Positions 4,587 to 54,375 of a DNA stretch of 64,000 bases are shown piece after piece. Each line of letters opens with the position of its first letter. The first letter of the stretch is position 1. The DNA is taken from positions 62,001 through 126,000 of IMG/VR virus record IMGVR_UViG_3300033995_001164; one strand, given 5' to 3'. Below the pieces are notes generated by a model. That model worked only from the letters and a program-made list of their open reading frames with translations. It did no database searches and was not told the DNA's origin. The position numbers and the translations under genes are program-made.

Positions 4587-5489
4587 TTATAATATTTCAA
4601 AATAATATTCATCAATTTGACCTCTTAAGTCCGCAACATCCATATCTTTAGGTGGTTTAATTATTTTTATTTTATTATACAATCGACCGCCATTGAGTTC
4701 GTGATATAATTTTAATCCATCTTGAAAAGCGTCTTCATCAAGACAAATAATAATTTTACCCAATGCCTTCTCATATAAAGTTTCAAATAATAAATCACTC
4801 ATTTGCTTACCTAACATCACTATTGAATTATCCAAGAAAAATCCATCAAAAGCTCCCTCAACCAGATAAACATCTTTAAACCAATCAATACGATTTTCAT
4901 TAAAAATTATTTGATTTTTTTCAGCCGTTGGATTTTTATATTTCATTCTACCATTAACCCACGAACGAGCAACAAAATAATTTAACTTATTATTTTTATC
5001 AAATGATGGCACGATAACTCTATACGCAAATTCACCACTCACTGTATAACCTATTTGATATTTCTCAATTATTTCATCCGTAATCCCTCGAGAAGTTAAA
5101 TATCTATAAGCCTCCGCGTGTGGAATGAATCTTGGGTTGGAATCTTTGAATTGGGTGTACCCCTCAGGAAGTTTTAATTGAGTTTTTTTGGATTCTTTAA
5201 TTTTTAATTCCTCGGGTTTTACTAAGTTATAAATCTTTTTTTGTTCTTTAGTTCCATATCTATCAAATAATCTACCCAGAGGTCCGTGCATATTATTTTC
5301 ATCATCACAAGACCAACAATGAAATAAATGTTTTTCTAATGAAATTTCCAAATTACCTTTTTTTTGACCAACCCCACATTCAGGACAATTATACCCATAT
5401 TGTAATTTTGAATCATACGTCTTTTCAGGGTCTCCCAAAATTTCACATAAAATATCTAAAAGTATGTCTTTATCATCTACCATAAACAC
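4587..5489 (-). CDS. DNA primase (zinc finger + Toprim)
   Basis: CPEC...HCWSC zinc finger; YLVEGAFD, LDEDA and DVAD Toprim motifs. Confidence 0.85.
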   Translation of the reverse strand: MFMVDDKDILLDILCEILGDPEKTYDSKLQYGYNCPECGVGQKKGNLEISLEKHLFHCWSCDDENNMHGPLGRLFDRYGTKEQKKIYNLVKPEELKIKESKKTQLKLPEGYTQFKDSNPRFIPHAEAYRYLTSRGITDEIIEKYQIGYTVSGEFAYRVIVPSFDKNNKLNYFVARSWVNGRMKYKNPTAEKNQIIFNENRIDWFKDVYLVEGAFDGFFLDNSIVMLGKQMSDLLFETLYEKALGKIIICLDEDAFQDGLKLYHELNGGRLYNKIKIIKPPKDMDVADLRGQIDEYYFEIL

Positions 5490-5524: not shown

Positions 5525-6214
5525 TTAATCATTACCTTTACGTATATTATCTGTAGCCCATAAAGGTTGTAAATTATTTAACGAATTCACAATTTTAGGG
5601 TCAGAACCTTTTTCAAACTTACTAACAGGGATTATATGGTCAATATGCCACTTACCCCAATTATCCCAAGACATTCCTTCAGTAAATAAATTTTCCAGAT
5701 GATTTTTTAATTCTACCGCTGAATATCCTAAAATATCGTAGGTAGATGACTCTTTTTTACTGCCAAGTCGTCTAATAACCGAACCTAACATACTTCTCCA
5801 AGCATATATGTGAGGGTACCTAATATATCTTTTTTTGTAGTATTCGTTAAGTTTTTCATGATTATTTTTCGAATAGTTTTTAACTCTTTTTTTATGTGTC
5901 TCAGAAAACCCTGAAAAATTATTATAATTATATTTAAATTTATCACTACGACATTTTTTACAGACAGACCTATAACCATCTTTACTACTAATATGTTTAT
6001 GAAATTCACCAACACCTTTTTCAATTAAACAAATAGAACAAGTTTTACTATTTATAACAATCTTTTTATTTTTCCTATTTGTATGATATTCCTTCTTACT
6101 AATAATTTTACGACATTCTTTGCATTGATAATATCGTCCATCTTTCTCCCTAATATGATAATGAAATTCACAAACATCTTTTTCAATTAAACATTTACTA
6201 CATATTTTTCTCAT
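5525..6214 (-). CDS. HNH homing endonuclease with two N-terminal CxxC...CxxC zinc modules
   Basis: GMSWDNWGKWHIDHIIP...NLQPLWATDNIRKG; duplicated ICSKC/TCSIC...KDG...CKxC. Confidence 0.85.
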   Translation of the reverse strand: MRKICSKCLIEKDVCEFHYHIREKDGRYYQCKECRKIISKKEYHTNRKNKKIVINSKTCSICLIEKGVGEFHKHISSKDGYRSVCKKCRSDKFKYNYNNFSGFSETHKKRVKNYSKNNHEKLNEYYKKRYIRYPHIYAWRSMLGSVIRRLGSKKESSTYDILGYSAVELKNHLENLFTEGMSWDNWGKWHIDHIIPVSKFEKGSDPKIVNSLNNLQPLWATDNIRKGND

Positions 6215-6356
6215 TACTAAAATACTTTATTAATAATTTATTAACCAATGACGACAAATTAATAGATTTATCTCTAACAATTTTTTCAATATTAGGGTCT
6301 ATAGTGATAGACATCCTAATTTTCTTTTCTTCTAACTTTATTTGTTTACGTCCCAT
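6198..6356 (-). CDS. ribbon-helix-helix protein (52 aa, MGRKQIKLEEKKIRMSITIDPNIEKIVRDKSINLSSLVNKLLIKYFSNEKNM), not in the ORF track
   Basis: Manual translation; beta-strand (IRMSITID) + helix + INLSSLVN helix pattern; paralog at 53179-53331; overlaps the HNH start by 17 nt. Confidence 0.75.
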   Translation of the reverse strand: MGRKQIKLEEKKIRMSITIDPNIEKIVRDKSINLSSLVNKLLIKYFSNEKNM

Positions 6357-6426
6357 TTCAATAAATATATTACTTTTTGTTAAAGTATCATTTTTTTTAT
6401 AATAAAATTAATTTAATTTACCCTAA

Positions 6427-6573
6427 TTATGGTTCCAAATCTACAATGTGTTTCTTCCACCATTTTTTTAAACGACTATTGTCATTAAGTTTTTCAATCC
6501 GTTTGTCTATTGGAAAAATTAATAACCATGACAACGCAATTACACACCAAATTATAAAAAATACTATTTCCAT
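6427..6573 (-). CDS. small single-pass membrane protein (48 aa, MEIVFFIIWCVIALSWLLIFP...VDLEP), not in the ORF track
   Basis: Manual translation; hydrophobic N-terminus then a basic tail; overlaps the stop of the upstream gene. Confidence 0.65.
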   Translation of the reverse strand: MEIVFFIIWCVIALSWLLIFPIDKRIEKLNDNSRLKKWWKKHIVDLEP

Positions 6574-6968
6574 TTTATTGTTTTTATTTTCCAATTATTA
6601 TCAATACTTACCGCAAAATAAGCCAGATGTTGATTAATGTCCGTTAATAAACTATTTCTCAAAAAGATACCAAGTTTAATCGGTGAAACCTTATGAGATT
6701 TATCTGTTTTTATATCCGACCTATACCATTTACTTTGATTTGCAGAAGTTACAACCACCACATTTAATTCACCATCAAACACTACATCAATTTCATTATA
6801 ACAAGAATTAGGTGTTGTATCATAAACCCTATATCCCGTAATGGAAAAGACACCCCTATATCGTTTTCCAACAACAGGGATGTCTTTCGAATATTTTAAA
6901 ATTGTTTTTCTAAGATTTTTGGTTTCAGTATCTCTTCGAATTGTATTCATTCTGTCAAAATCATTCAC
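6564..6968 (-). CDS. hypothetical protein, probably early-expressed
   Basis: 134-aa ORF directly downstream of a perfect Bacteroidota promoter. Confidence 0.65.
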   Translation of the reverse strand: MNDFDRMNTIRRDTETKNLRKTILKYSKDIPVVGKRYRGVFSITGYRVYDTTPNSCYNEIDVVFDGELNVVVVTSANQSKWYRSDIKTDKSHKVSPIKLGIFLRNSLLTDINQHLAYFAVSIDNNWKIKTIKWK

Positions 6969-7615: not shown

Positions 7616-8416
7616 TTAAATAATTTTACTACCTTTTTTTATATTGTCGATAGCCCACATTGGTTGTAAGTTAGTAAAATGACAGAGATTGTAAAGTTCT
7701 TCCTCAGTTTTGGCACTTGATAATGGTATTTTGTGGTCAATATGCCATCCATAATATCCGTAATTATCCCATGACATTCCTTCATTAAATTTTTGTTCTA
7801 AATGTTCTTTCAAAAATTCAGGAGAACAACCTATAATGTTAAAACTTTTATTATTTTTTCTTACATCTTTTAATTTAACATAAAAAAGTAACCTATTTCT
7901 AAGATTATGTTTTAATCTTTCGATTGGACATTTTTTTCGTTTATTTAACGAATTTGTAACCGACTTATTAATTAAATCTTTTTTATTTTTATCGTAATAT
8001 TCTTTCCATCTTTTTGTTTCTTTTTCAATATTATTTTTTCTATAATTTTTATTATATTCACCCCTTTTTTCTTTATTATTCGTATTTCTTTGTCTTGACT
8101 TCTCAATAAGAATTTCCCTATTTTTAGTATAATACTCTTTCCTTTTTATTAAAAGAATTTCCTTATTTTTTTCTATATATTCTTTCCTACCCTCTAAATT
8201 ATTAACATAATAATCTTTAAAATATAACTTAGTAACATCTTTTTTACTTTCTCGATATTTTTTTATTTTTTCAATATTTTTGTCATAATATTTTTTACTA
8301 ACATTTTTTCTACATTCTTTACAAATATTATTATACCCATCTTCCATACGACTATTCTTAAAAAAATATTCAACATTTTTTTCAAAGGCGCATTTATTAC
8401 ATTTTTTTGTATCCAT
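7616..8416 (-). CDS. HNH homing endonuclease (Zn ribbon + helical repeats + HNH)
   Basis: CNKC...CKEC; repeated YxxxNxE; GMSWDNYG..WHIDHKIP...NLQPMWAIDNIKKG. Confidence 0.85.
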   Translation of the reverse strand: MDTKKCNKCAFEKNVEYFFKNSRMEDGYNNICKECRKNVSKKYYDKNIEKIKKYRESKKDVTKLYFKDYYVNNLEGRKEYIEKNKEILLIKRKEYYTKNREILIEKSRQRNTNNKEKRGEYNKNYRKNNIEKETKRWKEYYDKNKKDLINKSVTNSLNKRKKCPIERLKHNLRNRLLFYVKLKDVRKNNKSFNIIGCSPEFLKEHLEQKFNEGMSWDNYGYYGWHIDHKIPLSSAKTEEELYNLCHFTNLQPMWAIDNIKKGSKII

Positions 8417-33137: not shown

Positions 33138-33905
33138 TTATATTGTCTTTAATATTTTATTTCCTTTTTTTAAATTATCTTCAGCCCATAATGGTTGAAG
33201 ATTCGTATAGTAACTAAGTTGGTAAATTTCTTCTTCAGTTTTAGATGAAGATAATGGTATTATGTGGTCTATATGCCACCCATATAATCCATAATTTTCC
33301 CAAGACATACCCTCCTTAAATTGTTTTTCCAAATGTTCTTTAAGAAATTCCGGAGTACATCCTACAATTTCAAAGGTTTTATTTTTTTTAGTTATAATGT
33401 TAAGTTTCAAATATTGACTTAATCTTCGTCTAATATTACTTGACATTTTTCTTTTTGGTTTTTGATTACTTTTCTTAAGGGTTTCTTTTATTTTTTCAGG
33501 ATTGTTTTCTCGATATTTTTTGTGAGATTCCATTATTTTTTCAATATTATTTTCTCTATATTGTTTACTATATTCCTTTATCTTTTCAATATTATTTTTT
33601 TTCCAAATTGATGAATTTTCAATAGATTTTTTAGAATTATTTTCATACCATTTTTGACTATAATCTTTTACCTTATCAGGGTTATTTTTTTTCCATTCTC
33701 TACTTCTTTGGATTTCTTTTTCAGAGTTTATTTTATACCAATTTTGACTTGTCTCTTTTTTCTTCTCTGAATTAAGTTCCATCCATTTTGAAACACGTTT
33801 TATATTACACGTTTTACATTCACTCCTCCTATAAAGTTTTTTCTCTAAATAAAAATCATCCAATGATTTTTCAATTAAACATTTAGTACAAACTTTTGTT
33901 TCCAT
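33138..33905 (-). CDS. HNH homing endonuclease with seven 15-aa helical repeats (start probably METKVC at 33905)
   Basis: CTKC...CKTC; (W/Y)xxNxEK repeats; GMSWENYG..WHIDHIIP...NLQPLWAEDNLKKG; TATTTAT immediately upstream. Confidence 0.85.
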   Translation of the reverse strand: METKVCTKCLIEKSLDDFYLEKKLYRRSECKTCNIKRVSKWMELNSEKKKETSQNWYKINSEKEIQRSREWKKNNPDKVKDYSQKWYENNSKKSIENSSIWKKNNIEKIKEYSKQYRENNIEKIMESHKKYRENNPEKIKETLKKSNQKPKRKMSSNIRRRLSQYLKLNIITKKNKTFEIVGCTPEFLKEHLEKQFKEGMSWENYGLYGWHIDHIIPLSSSKTEEEIYQLSYYTNLQPLWAEDNLKKGNKILKTI

Positions 33906-33936
33906 ATTCATAAATACCTTATCTCTTTTTTTTCTG

Positions 33937-35028
33937 TTAATTTTCTTTATTAATGACATTGAAGAACCCAAACCCATAGTTAATCATGTCACCAAGGTTA
34001 TCTACCTCACCTAATCTTTGTATTCTCTCATACGCGGAGTTTTTACCTCTTTCAACAAAAACATTAGTTTGAACCTGTGCTTGGTCAATAACTTTGAGTA
34101 ATACCTCATCTTTAGTTATTGGAACCGCAGTTATATTATTTTCCGTAAGTCCTGATGATTGTACGAAATAAATTGTGGTACCATCAATGTAATCATAGTA
34201 ATTAATTTCAGTAATTGTATAAGCAGTATAAATTGAAGTAACATCTGTTATTGCTCCCCATATTTGACCATTACTAATCACAGGAACCCCAATTCGTTCA
34301 TTAATTGTTGGATTACCATACATTTTTAACTCATTAATTCTCGACTTAGTAATTCCTGATACGGTAAACGGTATTGAAACATAATTGTTAGAGGTTTGAG
34401 CAGATACTTCATTAATCGCATCCCCAGAAAATATATAATCATAAGATACCGAAGTCCCAACCCAATTCCCTGAAGAAGGAGCAAAAAATGCTTCACCCTG
34501 TGGGTTGTAAATTACAACATCACTAAATGGAACCGTTATTGTTTTTGAAACACTGGTAATGCCCCAAGGATTTGTTTGTTCTAATTTAATCGTATATTCT
34601 TTATTCTCAACAGGGTATGTGTGATTAATTGAATTAGGTGCGTAATTAGTGATAGTTTGTTTTGGGGAACCGTCACCCCAATCAATCTTATATGAAGATA
34701 AATCTAAAAATTTTTGGAACTCATCCGACGTATTATAAACATTGTAAAGGTAAGGGGATGATGTTGTTGAAGAAAATATAAAATTTGCAACAACATTTTT
34801 TTGTAATACCGCACCATCAAATGGACTATAATACCCGGTATCAACCGCACTTTGTCTAATCAAAATAGGTATAGTCAATCCGGTTAATAAGGAACTACCA
34901 TTAACACCCGAACTAACAACTTGGGTCATTGCAGAATAAACACCAACGGGTGTCCCTTCATAATCAACAACGAATAAATCCCCAAGAATCGTTTCCGGTG
35001 ATATTTTAATATTATAAAAATCTTCCAT
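33937..35028 (-). CDS. structural protein with a PKD-like domain
   Basis: IDWGDGSP...INHTYP...YTIKL PKD signature. Confidence 0.55.
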   Translation of the reverse strand: MEDFYNIKISPETILGDLFVVDYEGTPVGVYSAMTQVVSSGVNGSSLLTGLTIPILIRQSAVDTGYYSPFDGAVLQKNVVANFIFSSTTSSPYLYNVYNTSDEFQKFLDLSSYKIDWGDGSPKQTITNYAPNSINHTYPVENKEYTIKLEQTNPWGITSVSKTITVPFSDVVIYNPQGEAFFAPSSGNWVGTSVSYDYIFSGDAINEVSAQTSNNYVSIPFTVSGITKSRINELKMYGNPTINERIGVPVISNGQIWGAITDVTSIYTAYTITEINYYDYIDGTTIYFVQSSGLTENNITAVPITKDEVLLKVIDQAQVQTNVFVERGKNSAYERIQRLGEVDNLGDMINYGFGFFNVINKEN

Positions 35029-44782: not shown

Positions 44783-47209
44783 TTATGAACCACAACCAAA
44801 ACATTCAAATTCAGAATCAGTTGGTTTAACAACTTCTTCAATTAAATTTATTTTTGGTTTATCGACTTTAACTATTGGTTGTTGTACTTTTGAAATATCA
44901 ACCGCTAAGTGTTTAGCTCCGGTTGAAATTGCTTTAGTTCTAACATAATAACAAAGAGTTTTTAACCCTTTACCCCAAGAATGAAAATGGGATGATGAAA
45001 TTTTTGATAATGTTGGTTCAGACATGTAGATATTCATTGACTGTGATTGGTCTATAAATGGTGCTCGGTCAGCTGACATATCAATCAGTTCTCTTTGAGA
45101 GATTTCCCAAATTGTTTTATATTTTGGTATTAAATGTTCAATCCTTTTAACTTTTTTATTGTAATTCTTATCTTCATTATCTAAATAATGATTAAAGTTA
45201 ATATTTTGAATCGAACCTTCATTCATAATAATTTCATTTTTTAAATCTTCACACCAAACACCTAATTTTTCAAAATCATTAATTAAATATTTATTAACAA
45301 TTAAAATTTCCCCACCAACTACACGACGATTAAATAACGCTGAGTGAGCCGGTTCTGTCATTTCAAATGAACCTGTAATTTTAGCTGAAGACGCAACGGG
45401 CATTTGAGCGGTAAATAATGAATTACAAACACCATATTTTGAAACATTATCTTTCAATCCATTCCAATCCCAACGACCTGATAAATTATCTTCAGTCATT
45501 CCCCACATATTAAATTGGAATACTCCTTGAGACATCGGTGAACCTTCAAAAAACTTATATGGTTGGAATAAACCTTCTTGACATAGAAAACTACTTTCAG
45601 AGATTGCCGCGAAATAGATTGTTTCAAAAATATCTTTATTAAGTTTTTTCGCTTCTTCAGATGTAAAAATATAATCCATTAAAAAAAAGACATCTGCAAG
45701 ACCTTGAGTTCCAATTGCTATTGCTCTTTGTTCTAACCCTCCTTTTCTTCCTTGTTCAGTTGAATAACTATTGATGTCCACAACTTTATTAAGTGCTCTA
45801 ACAACCTTTCTAACCTCACTGTAAAGTAAGTTGAAGTCGAACTCACCTTTTATAATGAAGTTCTTCAACACCATAGATGATAATGTACAGATTGCGGTAG
45901 TGTTCTCATCTGTATATTGGTAAATCTCATTACATAGGTTAGATTGTTTAATCACTCCAATGTTTTGATGGTTTGTCTTTCTGTTAGCACTATCTTTAGA
46001 ACATAAGTAAGGAACCCCGGTTTCAACTTGAGATTCAATAATCTTATTCCAAATTGTCTGAGCTTTCACTTTCTTACCTAAACCAAGTTCAACCGCCTTA
46101 TCGTAATTTGATTCATACTCATCACCATAAGCTTCCTGTAATGGTTTAATACCCGCTTTAATAATGTCGTTAGGACAGAATAAATACCAGTCATCGTTGT
46201 TCTTAACTGCGTTCATAAAATTGTCCGGTAACCAAATTGAGGTAAATAAATCTTTTGCTCTCAATTCCTCAGCACCTGTATTTTTTTTGATTTCAAGTAA
46301 GTCCATTATGTCTTTATGCCAAGGTTCTATGTAGATAGCAGCACTACCCGGTCTTCTACCTTGTTGATTAAAGAATCTCAACCCTTCATTAACAATTTTC
46401 AAATATTTTAATAATCCACCCGCAAATCCTCCTGACGAATTAATACGACTTTCTTTACTACGAATGTTAGACATTGATAATCCAATTCCTGCTGCGTCTG
46501 ACGAATAAGTCGAAATATCATTGAATGTTTGTAATAACCCTTCTCTTGAATCCCCATTATTATATTTCAACACGCAAGACGCCAATTGAGGTGTTTTAGT
46601 ACCCGCATTAATCATGATTGGAGTCGCAGGAGAAATAAGTTGGTTTGATAATGAATTGTAATATTCAACCGCCTCTTCAAAAGATTTAGTAACCCATAAT
46701 GCGACCCTCATATACATATGTTGCGGTCTTTCAATTACAACACCTTTCGGAGTCTTCAACAAATACATTTCCTGTAATGATTTCCACGCAAAATAATCAA
46801 AATTATAATCATTATCGTGATTTATTACAGAATCAATATCTCCCCACCCATATTCGTTAATTGTATCAATTAATATGTCATTAATAACACCATCCTCGTG
46901 TAAACGTTTCATAGTATTACAAAAACTACTATCAGTGTCTTTATGATATGCCGAAATAGCAACTGAAGAAGCCAATCTTGAGTAATCGTGATGACTACCA
47001 GTGTAAGCCGCCGCAATCTCATAAACCAATTTATCTAACTCTTTAGTCGTAATAAATCCTTCAGTCGGAACCGAGGTAATTACCTTAATAAAAATTTCAT
47101 CTGAATTAACATTTAAACCTTTTGCCGCTCGTTTAACCCTATTATAAATTTTTTGAGGGTTAAATGAAACTTCATCTCCCCCTCTTTTTTTAATCTTTAA
47201 TGACATCAT
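44783..47209 (-). CDS. nrdA: ribonucleotide reductase class I alpha subunit with ATP cone
   Basis: N-terminal ATP cone; SPATP, QLASC, SNLCNE and TAQMPVASS; C-terminal CFGC. Confidence 0.95.
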   Translation of the reverse strand: MMSLKIKKRGGDEVSFNPQKIYNRVKRAAKGLNVNSDEIFIKVITSVPTEGFITTKELDKLVYEIAAAYTGSHHDYSRLASSVAISAYHKDTDSSFCNTMKRLHEDGVINDILIDTINEYGWGDIDSVINHDNDYNFDYFAWKSLQEMYLLKTPKGVVIERPQHMYMRVALWVTKSFEEAVEYYNSLSNQLISPATPIMINAGTKTPQLASCVLKYNNGDSREGLLQTFNDISTYSSDAAGIGLSMSNIRSKESRINSSGGFAGGLLKYLKIVNEGLRFFNQQGRRPGSAAIYIEPWHKDIMDLLEIKKNTGAEELRAKDLFTSIWLPDNFMNAVKNNDDWYLFCPNDIIKAGIKPLQEAYGDEYESNYDKAVELGLGKKVKAQTIWNKIIESQVETGVPYLCSKDSANRKTNHQNIGVIKQSNLCNEIYQYTDENTTAICTLSSMVLKNFIIKGEFDFNLLYSEVRKVVRALNKVVDINSYSTEQGRKGGLEQRAIAIGTQGLADVFFLMDYIFTSEEAKKLNKDIFETIYFAAISESSFLCQEGLFQPYKFFEGSPMSQGVFQFNMWGMTEDNLSGRWDWNGLKDNVSKYGVCNSLFTAQMPVASSAKITGSFEMTEPAHSALFNRRVVGGEILIVNKYLINDFEKLGVWCEDLKNEIIMNEGSIQNINFNHYLDNEDKNYNKKVKRIEHLIPKYKTIWEISQRELIDMSADRAPFIDQSQSMNIYMSEPTLSKISSSHFHSWGKGLKTLCYYVRTKAISTGAKHLAVDISKVQQPIVKVDKPKINLIEEVVKPTDSEFECFGCGS

Positions 47210-48179: not shown

Positions 48180-50618
48180 TTAATTTTGTTGTGATTCTCT
48201 TTGTTTTCTTTTTTCTAAAAGTTCTTTAACTCTATCTCTTTTTCTATCTTCTTGTTGTTCTTCAAACCCTAAGAAAGTGACTGAACTTTCTGTATCAATT
48301 TCAAGTAATTCATTATTAAATTTACAATTTTCAAATACTACCCCATCTTTTCCAAGACGAGATTTAGTGATTGCAATTGTCGCTAAATTCATTTCTTTTT
48401 GTGTCAATGTTTTTGCAACCGATATAATAACGTGTCCTACTTGAGCCTTTTTGATTGACCCCCCCATTTGGTCAGTTGTTACTACCTCAGCAGATATTGA
48501 AGACCTATTACCTTGTGTTGCCGTCCACCCGACTAAATCAAGTTCGTGACACATCGCCTCAAATCCTCTCATTACTGAACCTTCCGCTTTCCACTCATCT
48601 TTACTACTTGATTCCGGTAAAATACAATCAATGTAATCCACTAAAACTAAATCAATTTTAATACCGTCAGCAATCATTTTTCTAACTTGAGTTTTGATTT
48701 GATTCATTGTCATAGTGTCTGAAGCCAATTTCTTCAATATTAAACGATTTTGCATCGTTTCTTTAATTTCAGTAATTTTAGACATTACATCTTCTTTATG
48801 TAATACTAAATTATCCGGTTCAATACCTGTCCACATCGTAAAATGTTTTCTTTGGATAATTTTTGGGTTATCCTCGAAGAATATTTGTAAAACATTGTAA
48901 CCTAAATTAAAAGCAGTGTTTGCAATTTTTGATAAAATGGTTGTGTTATGTGTTAAAACATAATCTCTAGTCACGTATAACTCGTCCGGATTAGAAACTT
49001 TAATACAAGTCGCCTCCTCATCATGAGAATAAGTTATCGACTTGACATATTTCTGTTCAACATATTTCTCCCTCTTATAATATCTACCAACTTTTCTTAG
49101 TAATTTGAACGGAACAACGTCATTTGCAAAAGACATTGTTATCGTGTAAGCCAACTGACCCTCTTTCTTCTCTCCGTCATAAGTATAAGTCGGTATTTTA
49201 GTGTTAATTCGAACAGTTCCACCCAAAGATAAAACTAATTCCCTAACATTATTACACAATTGTTCCGATATCGTCGTAAATTGAACCGTCCCTTTTTTAT
49301 CAACATGCCCATCAGTATCCATTAAACCTTGTAATAATGAAACTCTTACATCTAATGAATTATAAAGATAATCTTTTGGTATAAATTTATTGTTAGACTT
49401 TTTATTTAACAAATCATAAACTTTTAGTCGTTCTTTTATTTTACCCTTTAAGTTTATTGATTTTATACTTTTAGTTTCAGTTCTATAATATTCATTAAAC
49501 GATGAATGTTCACCAAGACATTCAATGGAATCAAATAACTCATCGTCCTTAGTACTTATACGGACACCACTATCACAAATACTACCATCTCCCAACAATA
49601 ACCCAAGTAAATATGGGTCTATCAACACTTCTCTTTTTTCAAAATCGACCGGACTTACCACAGGTAATCTATAGTTATATCGACCTCTCTTCTTAATATC
49701 TTTCATCATATCAGAGGTTTTAACAACCTTATACCCATAGTTCGGTTTATAAACACCCTTACCATTAACCCTTGTTTTAGCGGTTCTCATGTTCAATGTA
49801 TTAACACTCCAAAGATGTTCTTCATCACAATTCACAAAAGTATCATCACTAAACTCTACTTTATAAATTGGTCTAACACCTTGTGGGTAAACACCTATCA
49901 CATATTGTTCTTTCCCATCACTACCAATAACCTTATCCCCAAGTTTTACTTCACCCATTTTTACCCATCCTTGAGGTGTTAAAACCGGTTCAGAGTTTGG
50001 ACAGCTCTTGCCAACACCTGTTGGTGCTAATATAACCCCAATTTCCCCTTTTGCTAAACCACCTTTCAATAATTTGTCAATTCCCGGAATACCCATTGGG
50101 ATTGGGTGTCGGTAGTCTTCGTCTAAGACAGTATCTAAATTTTCAAATATATCTGTCTGACCTTTATCAACCTCTCCGACCTGCAATGCGTCTCTCATCA
50201 AACCTTCAACTTTATCATATGATTCAAAGTCTCCTTGGGTAATAATTTTCTGAGCCTTATCCATCGCCTTCTGTAGTTCTTGTTGTTTACAAAATTTCAA
50301 CGCCTTCTCTTGAACGAACATTGTTCCTTCAATTGGAGCGTCCTGAATTTGTTTGATTGTATCTAAAACAATCTTAGCGACCATTTCCTGTGAGATTTCG
50401 GACCTAACAATTTGCCCTAAAGTATCAAAATTTGGTGTTGATTCATATTTTTTGTAGTACTCTTTTGTCATCTGTAAAATGATTTTAAAATACTTATTAT
50501 CAAAATACACTGACTCAATAACATCCATTATAGATGATGAAAAATCTTTATCTACTATTATCTGATTTAGTAATTGTATTTGAAATGTGTTACCTAAGTA
50601 ATCGAAATTTTTATTCAT
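48180..50618 (-). CDS. replicative DNA helicase (DnaB/T4 gp41-like) containing an intein
   Basis: LAPTGVGK|TT Walker A interrupted by an intein; LVDYID, TATQGNR and KSRLG. Confidence 0.9.
48945..50006 (-). mobile_element. 354-aa intein with LAGLIDADG endonuclease, inserted in the helicase P-loop
   Basis: Starts [14 protein letters not shown]; EEHLW block B; LLGLLLGDG and LQGLMDTDG; ends VLTHN|T. Confidence 0.92.
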
Positions 50619-51131: not shown

Positions 51132-51446
51132 TTATACTATTTGTTTTCCCTCAACATTTCTTTTTATTCTGTCGGAGGTTCTTTTGTTTAACCATAAAAG
51201 AGCTTCGTCTAATTTGGTAATAGCAATTGCGTTTTCGCGACAAGGGAATTTACTTTGTAAGTAATTCATTCTGTTTAACAACATTTCAATTAATTCCTCA
51301 TTTGTTGTACCATCGGCGATTGTCTTTAATTCTGTTGAACCTTCAGTTATTGGTTCTTTTTGAATAAATTGTAATGCCTGTCCTTGTTCCTCTTTGTTTT
51401 CAAAGTTTGATAACTCGTACTTGTGTCCTTCTACTAATACTTTCAT
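51132..51446 (-). CDS. tad1: Tad1-like anti-defence (cyclic nucleotide sponge) protein; start probably MKVLVEG at 51446
   Basis: GTTNEELIEMLLNRMNYLQSKFPCRENAIAITKLDEALLWLNKRTSDRIKRNVEG matches the Tad1 C-terminal pattern (RENAxA.T..EEAL.W.N.R..DR..RNV.G); ATGA coupling to the upstream gene. Confidence 0.75.
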   Translation of the reverse strand: MKVLVEGHKYELSNFENKEEQGQALQFIQKEPITEGSTELKTIADGTTNEELIEMLLNRMNYLQSKFPCRENAIAITKLDEALLWLNKRTSDRIKRNVEGKQIV

Positions 51447-52441
51447 TTGTTTGTGTTTCGTTTTTCTTTTCTTGTTAATTTCATAAATGGTCTTAGGAAA
51501 TTCACCCAAGCCTCATCGTTTTTTGGAAGATATTTAAAGAGACCATCTTCCATCATAAGTCTCATTAGATTTTTGTATCCCCTATCGGTGGGGTCAATCG
51601 TGTCAGTAATAATTTGGTTTACTAATTCTTTCGCATTTTCTGTAATTAAGGGGTTAGATAAATCGACTATTTTTTTGTTTGTAGTGTAAAACTCTTCACC
51701 AAGTATACCATTTTTTGTTTTACCAATCAAAATATTTTCCAATACTTTTGATTTTTTTTCTTGCACGATATTTCCTGCATTAACTCGTATTTCTTCCATA
51801 GTGCATGGTTTAACCTGCATATCAGGGAATAATTTAACTAAAGTTTTTTCACCTAAACCCTCAATACCATTAATATTATCAGAATTATCTCCTGTAAGAA
51901 TTTTACAAGTTAAGACATTATAGTGGGGAATTTGAACTTTATTGATGGTAATCATATCACCCTGTTTAAAGTATTGTTTTGAGTTTGGTGAGTAAACGGA
52001 TACTTTATCCGAGATAAGCTGTGTAAGGTCCTTATCTGATGAAAATATGGTAATGTCTTCGTTGGTTGACATTTTACAATAATACGCAATAAGGTCGTCT
52101 CCTTCGTTATGAGGCGTTTCAACTTGCCTAACAAAGACCTCCTCAAGATATTCTTTAATACGAGCGTTTTGAGTTAGATATGATTCAAGTTCATATTCAT
52201 TAATATTTTGTTTTCTATTTGTCTTATATTGAGGATAAAGTTCTTTCCGAGTGGACGAACTATGTTCGGCATCCCACATAACAACTACCTTATCGTAATT
52301 ATGTTCCTCAAGGAATTTTCTAATGGTGTTGATAAAGTGGTAGATAGCACCCGAATGATTTTTATCACTATAAAGTTCTTTAACTCCGTGATACCCAATC
52401 TTCATTAAGTTGGCACCGTCAATTAATAATGTTTTTTTCAA
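51443..52441 (-). CDS. 5'-3' exonuclease / T4 RNase H-like flap nuclease
   Basis: LLIDG, EGDDLIA, SSDKDLTQ and GDNSDNINGIEGLGEKT. Confidence 0.9.
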   Translation of the reverse strand: MKKTLLIDGANLMKIGYHGVKELYSDKNHSGAIYHFINTIRKFLEEHNYDKVVVMWDAEHSSSTRKELYPQYKTNRKQNINEYELESYLTQNARIKEYLEEVFVRQVETPHNEGDDLIAYYCKMSTNEDITIFSSDKDLTQLISDKVSVYSPNSKQYFKQGDMITINKVQIPHYNVLTCKILTGDNSDNINGIEGLGEKTLVKLFPDMQVKPCTMEEIRVNAGNIVQEKKSKVLENILIGKTKNGILGEEFYTTNKKIVDLSNPLITENAKELVNQIITDTIDPTDRGYKNLMRLMMEDGLFKYLPKNDEAWVNFLRPFMKLTRKEKRNTNK

Positions 52442-52457
52442 TTAAACCTATTTAAGG

Positions 52458-53189
52458 TTATACAATAATTTTGTTACTCTTTTTTAAATTATCTTCAGCC
52501 CATAATGGTTGAAGATTTTCATAATGACATAACTTATAAAGTTCGTCTTCTGTTTTTGCCGATGATAATGGAATGATGTGGTCAATATGCCACTCACCCC
52601 TGTTATCCCAACTCATACCATCGCTAAATTGGGTTTCTAAATGTTCTTTAAGAAATTCCGGTGAACACCCTACAATATCGAAAGTTTTATTAGTTTTACT
52701 AATGTTTCGGGTTTTAAGAAATGATAAAAGTCTAGACCTCATAATACATTTTAATCGAAAAATAACATCATTTTTTAATCTTAAAGAATGATAAAGATTT
52801 CTTTTTACTTTAACTTTTTCTTTATTTTTTTCTGACCACTCTTTTTTATAAGTTAAAATAGTTTCTTTATTATTTTCATAATATATTTTATACCGATTTG
52901 GGTCTTTTTGGTATCTTTTTTTTGACCTATCATTATCTTTTACCCTAATTACATCAATATTTTCTTCTCGGTAATTTTTAACTTTTAATAATATTTTTTC
53001 CCGGTTATCAATGTATTCTTTTCTTTTTTGAGCCTTTATTTTTTCATCGTTATTATCCCTATATTTTTTCCAAACCATATAAGAACATTGTTTACATTCA
53101 GTTCTAAACCCATCTTTAGAATCTTTTCTTTTTCTAAAATTAGGTAATTCTTTTTCAAGATTACACTTACTACAAACTTTAGTTTCCAT
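52458..53189 (-). CDS. HNH homing endonuclease
   Basis: CSKC...KDG..ECKQC; YxxxNxE repeats; GMSWDNRGEWHIDHIIP...NLQPLWAEDNLKK. Confidence 0.85.
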   Translation of the reverse strand: METKVCSKCNLEKELPNFRKRKDSKDGFRTECKQCSYMVWKKYRDNNDEKIKAQKRKEYIDNREKILLKVKNYREENIDVIRVKDNDRSKKRYQKDPNRYKIYYENNKETILTYKKEWSEKNKEKVKVKRNLYHSLRLKNDVIFRLKCIMRSRLLSFLKTRNISKTNKTFDIVGCSPEFLKEHLETQFSDGMSWDNRGEWHIDHIIPLSSAKTEDELYKLCHYENLQPLWAEDNLKKSNKIIV

Positions 53190-53331
53190 TTCTAATATAT
53201 TCTTTTAATAATTTATTAACAAGGGAAGATAAATTTATAGATTTATCCTTAAAGTACTGTGGAAGTTCTGGGTCTATTGAGACTCCAATCTTAACTTTCT
53301 TTTCAATTTCTTCTTTTTTCTTTCTTCCCAT
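53179..53331 (-). CDS. ribbon-helix-helix protein (50 aa, MGRKKKEEIEKKVKIGVSIDPELPQYFKDKSINLSSLVNKLLKEYIRNGN), not in the ORF track
   Basis: Manual translation; paralog of 6198-6356; overlaps the HNH start by 11 nt. Confidence 0.75.
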   Translation of the reverse strand: MGRKKKEEIEKKVKIGVSIDPELPQYFKDKSINLSSLVNKLLKEYIRNGN

Positions 53332-53382
53332 ATTAATAAATATCTACAAATGTAATAAAAGTAGAATAATTATAACTTTTTT

Positions 53383-54375
53383 TTATTCTTCTTCAAAACT
53401 TTCTTTTTCTGATTCATCAAGTATAATCTCCCCCGTACCACTAAGTATTGCGTTCCAATATCCAGAATATTCTTTTTTATATTTATCTAAAGACTCTTTT
53501 GTGTCCGCAATATATCCTTGAGGCACTACAATAATTTTACTATCCTTATATTGTATTCCATTCACGTGATTTTTTAATATAGAGATTTTTGTTCTAGTTG
53601 CGTAGGAAATTGTTCTACCATTTTTAGTTGCCGTAATATGATTCACACCCGCCTTTTTTTGATTACCAAATAAAAATACCAAACTACTTGCTAACCATAT
53701 CGCCTCACCACCCTTACTCTTAATTTCCGCTTGGCCAAACGGGTTATCAGGAAGGAGTACCCATGGTTGATTTAAAAAAACCACGGTATTATAATATGGA
53801 TAATCTTCTTTTTTAGATTTAGATATTCTTGAATGTATACCCATACCAACTTTATCAGCAAGTACTTTAGCGGTGTGCATTCCCCCACCTTTTCCGTCAA
53901 ATGTCATTTGACAGGGAATTGACCCAATTGAGTCCCATAAAAATAATAGACTATAAGGTATTTCACCTCTTTCTTGAGCATCTAACACATCATTAATAAA
54001 ATCAGTTGCTTGTTCAACAACGTCAAATGAATCGTTAAATATAAAATGACCGTCCCAAACACCATCCTCATTTTGTTCTGCCTGTAATCCAAGTTCTACC
54101 GAGTGTTCCCAAGACCATTTTTTTTCCGTAATAATAAACACCGGTAAATGTCCTTTTTTTTGGGCATCAACCGCTGCCAATATCATTGCTGTTGATTTTG
54201 ATGTGTTTGAGTGACCCAAGAACATATTAATTCCTCCCATCACCGGACCTGGTAATCCAACCGTATCCATAAACGCCTCACCACAATTATAAAAACTCTC
54301 AGGTTTATATTTTGTTTTTGTTGAGAATTTACCTTTAATATCCTCTAATGAGAATGTTTTCTTCTTAATTGCCAT
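53383..54375 (-). CDS. RecA/UvsX-like recombinase
   Basis: GHSNTSKST Walker A-like, FIITEK, LWDSIGS Walker B, FLNQ and KSKGGEA..LAS. Confidence 0.8.
   Translation of the reverse strand: MAIKKKTFSLEDIKGKFSTKTKYKPESFYNCGEAFMDTVGLPGPVMGGINMFLGHSNTSKSTAMILAAVDAQKKGHLPVFIITEKKWSWEHSVELGLQAEQNEDGVWDGHFIFNDSFDVVEQATDFINDVLDAQERGEIPYSLLFLWDSIGSIPCQMTFDGKGGGMHTAKVLADKVGMGIHSRISKSKKEDYPYYNTVVFLNQPWVLLPDNPFGQAEIKSKGGEAIWLASSLVFLFGNQKKAGVNHITATKNGRTISYATRTKISILKNHVNGIQYKDSKIIVVPQGYIADTKESLDKYKKEYSGYWNAILSGTGEIILDESEKESFEEE

What the first reader, a model, noticed from the sequence alone, without database searches (positions are those of the whole stretch)
6198..6390. Unannotated RHH + HNH two-gene cassette, present twice (also 52458-53365)
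Seen: two ~50-aa ORFs missed by the track (6198-6356 and 53179-53331) are clear paralogs (MGRK...EKK...IDP...DKSINLSSLVNKLL..Y). Each overlaps the start codon of a downstream HNH endonuclease (17 and 11 nt) and has TATTTAT 4 nt upstream of its own ATG. The two cassettes are 47 kb apart in unrelated contexts (next to primase; between recA and RNase H), so the pair appears to move as a unit. Established: a strand-helix-helix pattern with an NxS helix start is typical of ribbon-helix-helix (CcdA/CopG/Arc-like) DNA binders. The putative DNA-contacting strand differs (IRMSIT vs VKIGVS) while helix B is identical. Inference: this is a self-regulating mobile nuclease cassette, either an RHH repressor limiting a free-standing homing endonuclease or an RHH-antitoxin/HNH-toxin pair. 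The other two HNH paralogs here lack the RHH, which gives an internal comparison.
Basis: partly seen in the sequence, partly recalled or inferred. Interest (0 to 1): 0.75.

Follow-up and report, generated by a model that had tools for sequence, protein, structure and literature searches.

The report
Homing nuclease cassettes with RHH head
Two small genes in this 309-kb freshwater phage encode ribbon-helix-helix DNA-binding proteins that, together with their promoter, form a portable "head" placed in front of selfish homing-endonuclease genes, most likely to keep nuclease expression in check.

Summary
Both ORFs (6198-6356 and 53179-53331, minus strand) are real paralogs with 54% identity. They overlap the downstream HNH genes by 17 and 11 nt. 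They are under purifying selection (dN/dS about 0.11) and belong to a family of at least 1,320 protein clusters that is almost entirely restricted to phages.

Structure prediction gives a strand-helix-helix monomer and a supported homodimer. The best structural matches are CopG, Arc and ORF56.

The whole genome carries five paralogs: four precede HNH genes and one precedes a LAGLIDADG gene. A sixth, unrelated RHH-like gene precedes a GIY-YIG-like nuclease. Relatives also pair the same head with a PD-(D/E)xK nuclease.

The head is the promoter, the RHH gene and the partner's first three codons. It is at least 95% identical in front of unrelated partner genes.

Most related phages have empty sites, with the recombinase and FEN genes only 8-31 nt apart. 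Some carry decayed remnants. These are therefore free-standing homing-endonuclease cassettes.

The RHH has no toxin-binding tail and serves interchangeable partners, so a toxin-antitoxin pair is unlikely. An autorepressor of the cassette promoter is the best reading, but this is inferred and not shown. I rate it a new variant of a known kind.

The parts
6357..6426 (-). Non-coding head of cassette A. On the minus strand it reads TACTTT-N5-AAAGTA (an inverted repeat), then ATATATTTAT, then 4 nt, then the ATG. It is a promoter-like element with operator-like repeats.
   Evidence: ACTTT lies 19-20 nt before TATTTA in 77 of 90 unique heads.
6198..6356 (-). RHH-A, a 52-aa ribbon-helix-helix protein. 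Its strand reads KIRMSIT.
   Evidence: (Pfam CcdA E 1.3e-3, below the cut-off). It is 100% identical to copies in four IMG/VR contigs.
5525..6214 (-). HNH-A, 229 aa. It has two N-terminal CxxC...CxxC zinc ribbons and a C-terminal HNH motif (WHIDHIIP...NLQPLW...DN). It overlaps RHH-A by 17 nt.
   Evidence: (PHROG 1035 'endonuclease VII', E 6e-28).
53332..53382 (-). Non-coding head of cassette B. It starts right after the recombinase stop codon. It reads A-run/AAAAGT, 12 nt, ACTTTT, 13 nt, GATATTTAT, TAAT, ATG.
   Evidence: The left boundary of the insert is defined against empty sites.
53179..53331 (-). RHH-B, a 50-aa ribbon-helix-helix protein. Its strand reads KVKIGVS.
   Evidence: Pfam CcdA E 8e-5, 23.3 bits against a cut-off of 22.4. 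AF2 pLDDT 85 with helices 22-29 and 34-47. RHH structures are the best Foldseek matches. The homodimer is supported at 0.61 against 0.00 for controls.
52458..53189 (-). HNH-B, 243 aa, with a zinc ribbon and a C-terminal HNH domain. It overlaps RHH-B by 11 nt.
   Evidence: (PHROG 1035, E 4e-25).
7616..8416 (-). HNH paralog H5 with no RHH and no promoter motif of its own. It follows the upstream gene directly.
33138..33977 (-). HNH paralog H6 without an RHH. Its likely start is the METKVCTKC at 33905, and it is embedded in an operon.
53383..54375 (-). Recombinase (UvsX/RecA-like). It is the left flank of insertion site B.
   Evidence: annotated 'recombinase' in Flavobacterium phage vB_FspM_immuto, 37% identity.
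51443..52441 (-). 5'-3' exonuclease/FEN (RNase H-like). It is the right flank of insertion site B.
   Evidence: 5_3_exonuc_N, E 3e-32.
4587..5489 (-). DnaG-type primase. It is the right flank of insertion site A.
6427..6594 (-). A 55-aa ORF that forms the left flank of insertion site A. In cassette-free relatives it lies about 40 nt from the primase gene.
   Evidence: L396, L398-L401.

Best explanation
Each locus is a free-standing homing-endonuclease cassette of about 0.9 kb, inserted between two conserved replication or recombination genes. One lies upstream of the primase gene. The other lies between the recombinase and FEN genes.

The cassette has a portable 5' head and an exchangeable nuclease body. 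The head holds a short A-rich boundary, a phage promoter-like element ((G)ATATTTAT, 4-8 nt before the ATG) overlaid with phased or inverted ACTTT/AAAGT repeats, a 45-55-aa RHH gene, and the start codon plus the first 2-3 codons of the nuclease.

Shown: the RHH fold and predicted dimer, the linkage, the modularity, the presence/absence polymorphism, and purifying selection.

Inferred: the RHH dimer binds the repeats over its own promoter and represses it. Because the nuclease has no promoter of its own and its ATG lies inside the end of the RHH ORF (an overlap of 3n+2 nt), nuclease synthesis would be tied to RHH transcription and translation. Negative feedback would then keep the nuclease at a low, bounded level. 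It would also limit read-through from the cassette promoter into the essential downstream gene.
For: RHH fold:
- Pfam CcdA N-terminal RHH domain and a PHROG 'Arc-like repressor' family match.
- The AF2 model shows an extended strand followed by two helices, pLDDT 85.
- The best Foldseek matches are ORF56, StnY, CopG, CdbA, Arc and TacA, with TM 0.45-0.57.
- The homodimer score is 0.61 against 0.00 for the best of 3 controls. That mark was reached by 20 of 30 proteins solved as pairs and by 1 of 23 solved as single chains. The interface covers residues 11-21 plus both helices.

Linkage: of 109 non-redundant RHH loci, about 79 have an intact HNH partner, 10 a LAGLIDADG partner, and 4 a NUMOD3 + TnsA-like PD-(D/E)xK partner. 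The rest are remnants or contig edges. Independent Logan, ENA and JGI contigs show the same pairs.

Modularity: the head is at least 95% identical in five cassettes, and similarity ends right after partner codon 3. Beyond that point lie three unrelated genes.

Mobility:
- At the recombinase|FEN site, about 60 of the 80 loci fetched with the FEN gene have an 8-31-nt gap and no cassette.
- Eight of those loci show RHH+HNH together, five further loci (contig ends or the L320/321 remnant) show only a piece of the HNH gene, and none has the RHH alone.
- L320/321, L081, L033 and L185 are decayed copies.
- The primase site is empty in L396 and L398-L401.

Operator-like repeats:
- ACTTT sits at a fixed -20/-19 from TATTTA in 77 of 90 unique heads.
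- Extra copies lie 9-12 nt away.
- The inverted pair AAAGT..ACTTT occurs in 34 of 90 heads against 0.37 expected from shuffles.
- RHH subclasses at one and the same site differ in both the strand residues and the flanking repeats.

Selection: RHH dN/dS is 0.11 against 0.29 for the HNH, and amino-acid identity is 83% against 59%.

Analogy: RHH-only repressors are encoded first in the operon they control, as with CopG-RepB and Arc/Mnt (my own knowledge). IS605 Arc is shown to repress the transposon's promoter (bioRxiv 10.64898/2026.09.24.754181). I-TevI autorepression shows that homing endonucleases are kept under negative feedback (PMC2988022).
Against: - No binding or expression data exist.
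- The metatranscriptome contigs were too sparse to place a transcription start.
- An ACTTT-type promoter also precedes three RHH-less nuclease genes in this genome, at G000 188751, 229073 and 240389. ACTTT may therefore be a promoter element of this cassette class rather than the RHH operator.
- Inverted repeats arise easily in 31% GC DNA, and the heads are related by descent, so the shuffle test overstates significance.
- Three of seven HNH paralogs, and an H1-like copy at the same primase site (L406), manage without an RHH.
- The RHH stays intact next to decayed nucleases. This may point to a role beyond controlling its own nuclease.
- Foldseek E-values are weak (0.7-10), and the Pfam hit is borderline.
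Confidence: 0.6

Rival explanations
1. Toxin-antitoxin pair. The RHH would be a CcdA-like antitoxin that binds and neutralises the HNH toxin protein and also represses the operon.
For: - The best Pfam hit is CcdA, and there is a weak BrnA_antitoxin hit.
- JGI names many homologs 'post-segregation antitoxin'.
- The gene order, with a small RHH first and overlapping a larger nuclease, mimics type II operons.
Against: - The match covers only the N-terminal DNA-binding part of CcdA, profile positions 1-39 of 71.
- The proteins end 3-9 residues after helix B, and that tail is shared with the partner's reading frame.
- The same head (at least 95% nt identity) precedes HNH, PD-(D/E)xK and methylase genes, and paralogs precede a LAGLIDADG gene. 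Co-evolved protein neutralisation is therefore implausible.
- There is one hit in 185,579 cellular genomes, on a 2.2-kb MAG contig.
- Partners decay while the RHH persists. If the nuclease were an addictive toxin, the antitoxin would be expected to become dispensable once the toxin is gone.
Confidence: 0.06
2. Trans-acting phage regulator or shared regulon. The RHH paralogs would act mainly on other promoters, for example all ACTTT-type nuclease promoters or neighbouring replication genes. They could act as repressor or activator, and the link to the nuclease would be hitch-hiking within a mobile module.
For: - An ACTTT-type promoter is shared by RHH-headed and RHH-less nuclease genes.
- K12 and K14 of the strand region are nearly invariant across classes.
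- The RHH is retained after the nuclease decays.
- There is no terminator between the cassette and the downstream FEN or primase gene.
Against: - RHH and nuclease are gained and lost together at the recombinase|FEN site.
- The tight 3n+2 overlap is conserved in 101 of 105 pairs.
- RHH classes track insertion sites, as expected for a cis-acting part of each cassette.
Confidence: 0.17
3. Homing accessory or immunity factor. The RHH would bind DNA at or near the nuclease's target or the cassette borders. It would either protect the carrier genome from self-cleavage or help repair-mediated copying.
For: - Each RHH class is tied to one genomic site.
- The RHH is more conserved than the nuclease.
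Against: - Near-identical heads serve nucleases of different folds, which would have different targets.
- No resemblance is evident by eye between the head repeats and the empty-site sequence. No formal comparison was made.
- RHH-less paralogs persist at similar sites.
Confidence: 0.08
4. One gene read by programmed frameshift. RHH and nuclease would be fused into one protein by a +1/-2 shift, with the RHH serving as the nuclease's DNA-binding domain.
For: The nuclease always lies in the same relative frame, with an overlap of 3n+2 nt.
Against: - Every partner keeps its own ATG.
- Overlap length varies from 8 to 35 nt with no shared slippery sequence.
- In cassette B, the partner frame carries a stop six codons upstream of its ATG, read directly.
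- The constant frame follows simply from common descent of the junction.
Confidence: 0.02

Closest known systems
Free-standing homing endonuclease genes of T4-like phages (seg and mob genes)
   Same: - A nuclease gene of a homing-endonuclease family inserted between conserved genes.
- Presence/absence polymorphism among relatives.
- Its own promoter, many paralogs per genome, and decay remnants (PMC2988022).
   Different: T4 seg and mob genes carry no separate regulator gene. Their control is by promoter choice and RNA hairpins that hide the ribosome-binding site. Here a dedicated RHH gene and its promoter form a conserved head that is shared by four nuclease families.
I-TevI transcriptional autorepression
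   Same: Negative feedback on the promoter of a homing-endonuclease gene by a DNA-binding module of the element itself.
   Different: In I-TevI the nuclease's own DNA-binding domain binds an operator that resembles the homing site. Here a separate RHH protein would do the job, and the repeats do not resemble the empty site by eye.
CopG-RepB operon of plasmid pMV158; Arc and Mnt of phage P22 (RHH-only repressors)
   Same: - A protein of about 45-53 aa that is an RHH domain and nothing else.
- It is encoded first in the operon it represses, ahead of a DNA-cutting protein in the CopG case.
- CopG and Arc are among the best structural matches.
Operon details are from my own knowledge.
   Different: No detectable sequence relationship. 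The partner here is a homing endonuclease, and the module is mobile and recombines with different partners.
Arc of IS605-family transposons (bioRxiv 10.64898/2026.09.24.754181)
   Same: A small RHH encoded inside a selfish element and shown to repress the element's own promoter for its nuclease and transposase genes. The authors note in passing that related arc genes lie next to homing-endonuclease genes.
   Different: - A bacterial transposon with TnpA and TnpB, not a phage cassette.
- A divergent or bidirectional gene arrangement rather than an overlapping, co-directional pair.
- Homology to the present family was not tested.
Controller (C) proteins of restriction-modification systems (for example C.PvuII, C.AhdI)
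   Same: A small autoregulatory DNA-binding gene lies just upstream of an endonuclease gene, often overlaps it, and sets the nuclease level (my own knowledge).
   Different: C proteins are helix-turn-helix proteins, act as activator and repressor in turn, and serve restriction enzymes that are paired with a methylase.
CcdA/CcdB and other type II toxin-antitoxin systems with RHH antitoxins
   Same: The RHH DNA-binding domain gives the best Pfam hit, and the gene order is similar.
   Different: - There is no C-terminal toxin-binding region.
- The partner is not a known toxin family and is interchangeable.
- The family is restricted to phages.

Membership tests
Ribbon-helix-helix (RHH/MetJ-Arc) superfamily | A strand-helix-helix domain of about 45 residues | tested here: met
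   In the AF2 model (pLDDT 85), residues 11-21 are extended and helices span 22-29 and 34-47. The best Foldseek matches are RHH proteins over their whole length, with TM 0.45-0.57 but weak E-values.
Ribbon-helix-helix (RHH/MetJ-Arc) superfamily | A homodimer in which the two N-terminal strands pair into one sheet | tested here: met
   The prediction scored 0.61 against 0.00 for the best of 3 controls. That mark was reached by 20 of 30 proteins solved as pairs and by 1 of 23 solved as single chains. The symmetric interface includes residues 11-21 of both copies. This is a prediction, not a measurement.
Ribbon-helix-helix (RHH/MetJ-Arc) superfamily | A sequence-profile match to a curated RHH family | tested here: inconclusive
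   - RHH-B matches Pfam CcdA at E 8e-5, 23.3 bits against a cut-off of 22.4.
- RHH-A scores 19.5 bits, below the cut-off.
- A PHROG 'Arc-like repressor' family matches at E 1.3e-3.
- A profile search of PDB sequences found nothing meaningful.
Ribbon-helix-helix (RHH/MetJ-Arc) superfamily | Sequence-specific binding to repeated DNA sites | not testable with these tools
   Only candidate sites were found: phased or inverted ACTTT/AAAGT repeats.
Type II toxin-antitoxin system (CcdAB-like) | The antitoxin has a toxin-binding region in addition to its DNA-binding domain | tested here: not met
   The proteins are 45-55 aa long. Three to nine residues follow helix B, and these overlap the partner ORF.
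Type II toxin-antitoxin system (CcdAB-like) | A fixed, co-evolving toxin partner | tested here: not met
   The same head precedes HNH, PD-(D/E)xK and methylase genes. Paralogs precede a LAGLIDADG gene.
Type II toxin-antitoxin system (CcdAB-like) | Growth arrest by the toxin that is relieved by the antitoxin | not testable with these tools
   This needs expression tests.
Free-standing homing endonuclease gene | Encodes a nuclease of a homing-endonuclease family | tested here: met
   - HNH: PHROG 1035 at E 4e-25. Pfam HNH is near its cut-off in protein scans and over it in the six-frame search. H201, D203, H204, N225 and N234 are invariant.
- LAGLIDADG_3 is over its cut-off.
- NUMOD3 is over its cut-off.
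Free-standing homing endonuclease gene | An intergenic insertion that is present in some related genomes and absent, with an intact junction, in others | tested here: met
   At the recombinase|FEN site, inserts of 860-944 nt contrast with gaps of 8-31 nt. The primase site is filled here and empty in L396 and L398-L401.
Free-standing homing endonuclease gene | Cleaves the cassette-free allele and is copied into it during co-infection | not testable with these tools
   There is no isolate. This needs in-vitro cleavage of the empty-site DNA and phage crosses.
C-protein-controlled restriction-modification system | A helix-turn-helix controller protein and a cognate methylase | tested here: not met
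   The regulator is an RHH. There is no methylase in the window cassettes. The methylase next to some heads (L044, L091) appears where the nuclease is missing.

The most novel reading that the evidence does not exclude
The RHH head would be a universal, exchangeable control module that this phage lineage uses for selfish nucleases of all four classical homing-endonuclease families. The RHH paralogs would share a core site (ACTTT) and so form a genome-wide network. That network would silence or time the genome's ~18 nuclease-type genes, including the RHH-less ones that carry the same promoter type. New nucleases would join by recombination at the conserved junction just after the partner's start codon.
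Probability: 0.25. Interest if true: 0.78.

Novelty: new variant of a known kind. Interest (0 to 1): 0.62.

Why it matters
How phages tolerate dozens of selfish nucleases is known mainly from T4. There, control is by promoter choice, RNA hairpins and, for I-TevI, self-repression.

This finding is a different solution. A dedicated micro-repressor gene is physically welded to the nuclease's start codon. It is conserved more strongly than the nuclease and is re-used across HNH, LAGLIDADG, PD-(D/E)xK and, with a second RHH type, GIY-YIG enzymes.

It gives a directly testable model of dosage control of homing endonucleases. It also shows gene-module shuffling at a defined junction, and it warns against annotating these roughly 50-aa genes as 'antitoxins'.

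The family is abundant, with at least 1,320 clusters, yet it is missing from deposited phage genomes and has not been described in the literature I could search. The one exception is a passing remark in the IS605 Arc preprint.

Tried and rejected
- **PDB profile search.** Searching the RHH alignment against PDB sequences gave only spurious repeat-protein hits.
- **GenBank phages.** megablast of the region and tblastn of the RHH found no match.
- **Transcript evidence.** Five weak RNA-type runs were found. The laid contigs were short fragments, partly from relatives, with no information on direction or 5' ends, so nothing can be said about transcription starts.
- **Sigma-70-type scan.** Promoter-like hits were no more frequent than in shuffles and sat at inconsistent positions. 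No intrinsic terminators were found around either cassette.
- **PDB profile search with the HNH alignment.** The only hit was a weak match of the N-terminal zinc ribbon to Hpy99I, E 0.013.
- **Relationship of the sixth RHH.** hhalign between the main RHH family and the sixth one (G000 266860) showed no significant relationship.
- **Frameshift fusion.** Considered and rejected; see the rival explanations.
- **RHH gene as homing target.** The idea that the RHH gene is the target rather than part of the element was rejected, because empty sites lack the RHH too.
- **Methylase as a designed partner.** Rejected. In L043 the head is followed by a nuclease and then an intein-less methylase. In L044 the nuclease is missing and only its first codons remain.
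- **RHH-HNH complex.** This was not tested.
Full report
**Observation.** The window is bases 62001-126000 of a 309,177-bp virus record with 31.6% GC. All genes near the finding lie on the minus strand. ORF 6198-6356 (52 aa) and ORF 53179-53331 (50 aa) exist as described. They are 54% identical, E 2e-13. They overlap the downstream ORFs 5525-6214 and 52458-53189 by 17 and 11 nt, and each has TATTTAT 4 nt before its ATG.

The downstream proteins have N-terminal CxxC...CxxC zinc ribbons and a C-terminal HNH motif. They match PHROG 1035 'endonuclease VII' at E 6e-28 and 4e-25. Pfam HNH scores just under its cut-off in protein scans and over it in the six-frame search. His201, Asp203, His204, Asn225 and Asn234 are invariant in 18 homologs.

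The flanks are a DnaG-type primase on one side and a recombinase plus a 5'-3' exonuclease/FEN on the other. The nearest deposited phage is Flavobacterium phage vB_FspM_immuto, whose recombinase is 37% identical. A Bacteroidota host is therefore plausible but not shown.

**The small proteins are real and are RHH proteins.** The family has at least 1,320 clusters at 90% identity in public metagenomes, and JGI labels many of them 'post-segregation antitoxin'. Across 52 cassettes at one site, the RHH has dN/dS of about 0.11 and 83% mean amino-acid identity. The HNH has 0.29 and 59%.

RHH-B passes the Pfam CcdA cut-off, matching only the N-terminal DNA-binding part of that model. RHH-A falls just below it. 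With a 52-sequence alignment, AlphaFold2 gives an extended segment 11-21 followed by helices 22-29 and 34-47, pLDDT 85. The best Foldseek matches are all RHH proteins (ORF56 of pRN1, StnY, CopG, CdbA, Arc, TacA) at TM 0.45-0.57. Their E-values are weak, as expected for 45 residues.

A two-copy complex prediction scored 0.61 against 0.00 for the best of three controls. That mark was reached by 20 of 30 proteins solved as pairs and by 1 of 23 solved as single chains. The symmetric interface includes the strand residues 11-21. That supports an RHH-type dimer without proving it.

**The pattern is wider than the finding.** The genome holds five paralogs of this RHH. Four overlap HNH paralogs by 17, 11, 20 and 20 nt. 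The fifth (G000 45640-45801) overlaps a LAGLIDADG endonuclease gene by 17 nt. Three HNH paralogs lack an RHH.

A sixth small gene (G000 266860-266997, 45 aa) has weak matches to other RHH families: RHH_7/CopG-like, RepB-RCR_reg and HicB, all near E 2e-3. It overlaps by 14 nt a nuclease with NUMOD3 and NUMOD1 modules and a weak GIY-YIG match. That pair is conserved in related contigs.

I collected 109 non-redundant RHH loci from IMG/VR and the genome. Their downstream partners are:
- about 79 intact HNH genes of this family;
- 10 LAGLIDADG genes;
- 4 NUMOD3 + TnsA-like PD-(D/E)xK genes, plus one truncated copy;
- 2 C5 methylases;
- 1 zinc-finger protein (DUF4379/DUF723);
- truncated remnants, contig edges or nothing for the rest.

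Of 105 partners, 101 overlap the RHH by 3n+2 nt, mostly 11 or 20. Contigs from Logan, ENA and JGI show the same pairs, and there the RHH is a called gene.

**The head is a module.** I aligned five cassettes whose partners are an HNH (two), a PD-(D/E)xK nuclease (two) and a methylase (one). The DNA is at least 95% identical from the A-run after the upstream stop codon, through the promoter-like region and the whole RHH ORF, up to ATG-GAA-AC of the partner. It is unrelated from the next codon on. This explains why unrelated partners begin with METK or MRK.

The methylase case looks secondary. In L043 the head is followed by a nuclease and then an intein-less methylase. In L044 only the first codons of the nuclease remain in front of the methylase.

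**The cassettes are mobile insertions.** Eighty relatives were fetched with the FEN gene. In about 60 of them the recombinase and FEN genes are 8-31 nt apart with no cassette. Eight loci carry RHH and HNH together, and where both flanks are present the insert is 860-944 nt; this group includes the window's phage. Five further loci (contig ends or the L320/321 remnant) show only a piece of the HNH gene, and none carries the RHH alone.

The near-isogenic pair L318 and L319 places the insert exactly between the recombinase stop and the FEN start. Several copies are decaying:
- L320/321 keep a mutated promoter, the first codons of the RHH and the last 57 residues of the HNH.
- L081, L033, L185 and L190 have broken HNH genes behind an intact RHH.

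The primase site is empty in the closest relatives. L406 has an H1-like HNH at that site with a promoter but no RHH. RHH classes track sites: the R2 type at recombinase|FEN, the R1 type before the primase gene, and the R5 type with LAGLIDADG between a DnaJ-like gene and a D12 methylase. The family is practically absent from cellular genomes, with one hit on a 2.2-kb MAG contig among 185,579 species. It is also absent from deposited phage genomes.

**Upstream region.** (G)ATATTTAT followed within 20 nt by an ATG occurs at 54 places in the genome, in front of many kinds of genes, so it is a general promoter-like motif. What distinguishes the heads is ACTTT at a fixed 19-20 nt upstream of TATTTA. 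This holds in 77 of 90 unique heads and 32 of 37 strand classes. Extra copies lie 9-12 nt away, and an inverted AAAGT lies 8 or 17 nt upstream in 34 of 90 heads, against 0.37 expected from shuffles.

In the genome, ACTTT accompanies 5 of 6 RHH rows and 6 of 48 other rows, Fisher p 8e-4. Two RHH subclasses at the same site differ both in the outward-facing strand residues and in the sequences flanking ACTTT. The R3 class has its own palindrome, TGTGAAT/ATTCACA.

Two cautions apply. The sequences are AT-rich and related by descent. Three RHH-less nuclease genes also have an ACTTT-type promoter. ACTTT may therefore belong to the promoter of this cassette class rather than to the operator.

**Mechanism.** Four things are shown: a conserved dimeric RHH-only protein, encoded first and welded to a nuclease gene that has no promoter of its own, inside a mobile cassette. 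The rest is inferred. The RHH binds the repeats over its promoter and represses it. The overlap couples nuclease translation to RHH translation. Together these hold the nuclease at a low level and limit read-through into the downstream essential gene, since no terminator-like sites were found.

The nearest precedents are:
- CopG-RepB and Arc/Mnt (my own knowledge);
- Arc of IS605, shown to repress the transposon promoter, in a preprint that notes in passing that related arc genes sit beside homing endonucleases;
- I-TevI self-repression;
- C proteins of restriction-modification systems (my own knowledge).

The antitoxin reading fails two defining tests: there is no toxin-binding region and no fixed partner. 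Searches of the held literature found no description of a conserved RHH-homing-endonuclease cassette in phages.

**Verdict.** 'Repressor' is the better of the two proposed mechanisms but remains untested. I rate this a new variant of a known kind, namely free-standing homing-endonuclease genes with a dedicated, portable RHH control head. Interest is 0.62.

Noticed in passing
window 48180-50618 (-): This 812-aa ORF is a DnaB-like helicase interrupted by a LAGLIDADG/Hom_end homing-endonuclease domain, which is probably an intein. A second ORF with LAGLIDADG hits (962 aa) lies at G000 143613-144071.
   Followed up: partly
G000 266860-267641 (outside the window; L427:861-1641): A sixth head: a 45-aa CopG-like RHH candidate overlaps by 14 nt a GIY-YIG-like nuclease with NUMOD3 and NUMOD1 modules. 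It lies behind two tandem TATACTTTTT repeats and ATATTTAT. The pair is conserved in L437-L440.
   Followed up: yes
G000 40125, 169545, 188751, 196899, 229073, 233641, 240389, 259760, 278598 (ORF starts): The genome holds about 18 free-standing nuclease genes of homing-endonuclease type. Those without an RHH head often start with a helix-turn-helix-like segment and still have the ATATTTAT promoter. This may be an alternative, built-in way of self-regulation.
   Followed up: partly
whole genome; window examples 6357-6370 and 53332-53344: (G)ATATTTAT sits only 4-20 nt before many start codons, and no Shine-Dalgarno-like sequence is evident. This suggests very short or absent mRNA leaders in this phage.
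   Followed up: no
L044:322-2460 and L091:3203-5284 against the methylase downstream of L043:2910-3806: The C5 DNA methylase next to the recombinase-side cassette exists with an intein (Intein_splicing + LAGLIDADG_3) and without one. This is a second layer of selfish-element polymorphism at the same locus.
   Followed up: partly
L185:3137-3247; L320:3255-3500: L185 has a collapsed HNH gene: 36 aa made of the first ~20 and last ~12 residues, joined in frame. L320 has a 239-nt remnant with a mutated promoter.
   Followed up: yes
L161:2305-3132: This partner seems to combine the N-terminus typical of the PD-(D/E)xK partners (MEENRCHCK...) with a C-terminal HNH motif. It may be a domain-shuffled nuclease.
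   Followed up: no
G000 151940 (-) and 152023 (+) (L005): The fourth RHH head shares its AAAGT/ACTTT region with a divergent ATATTTAT promoter for a 125-aa ORF on the other strand. One operator could control both directions.
   Followed up: no
window 5525-6214 (-): HNH-A carries two copies of the N-terminal zinc ribbon (residues about 1-38 and 54-91), whereas its paralogs have one.
   Followed up: no
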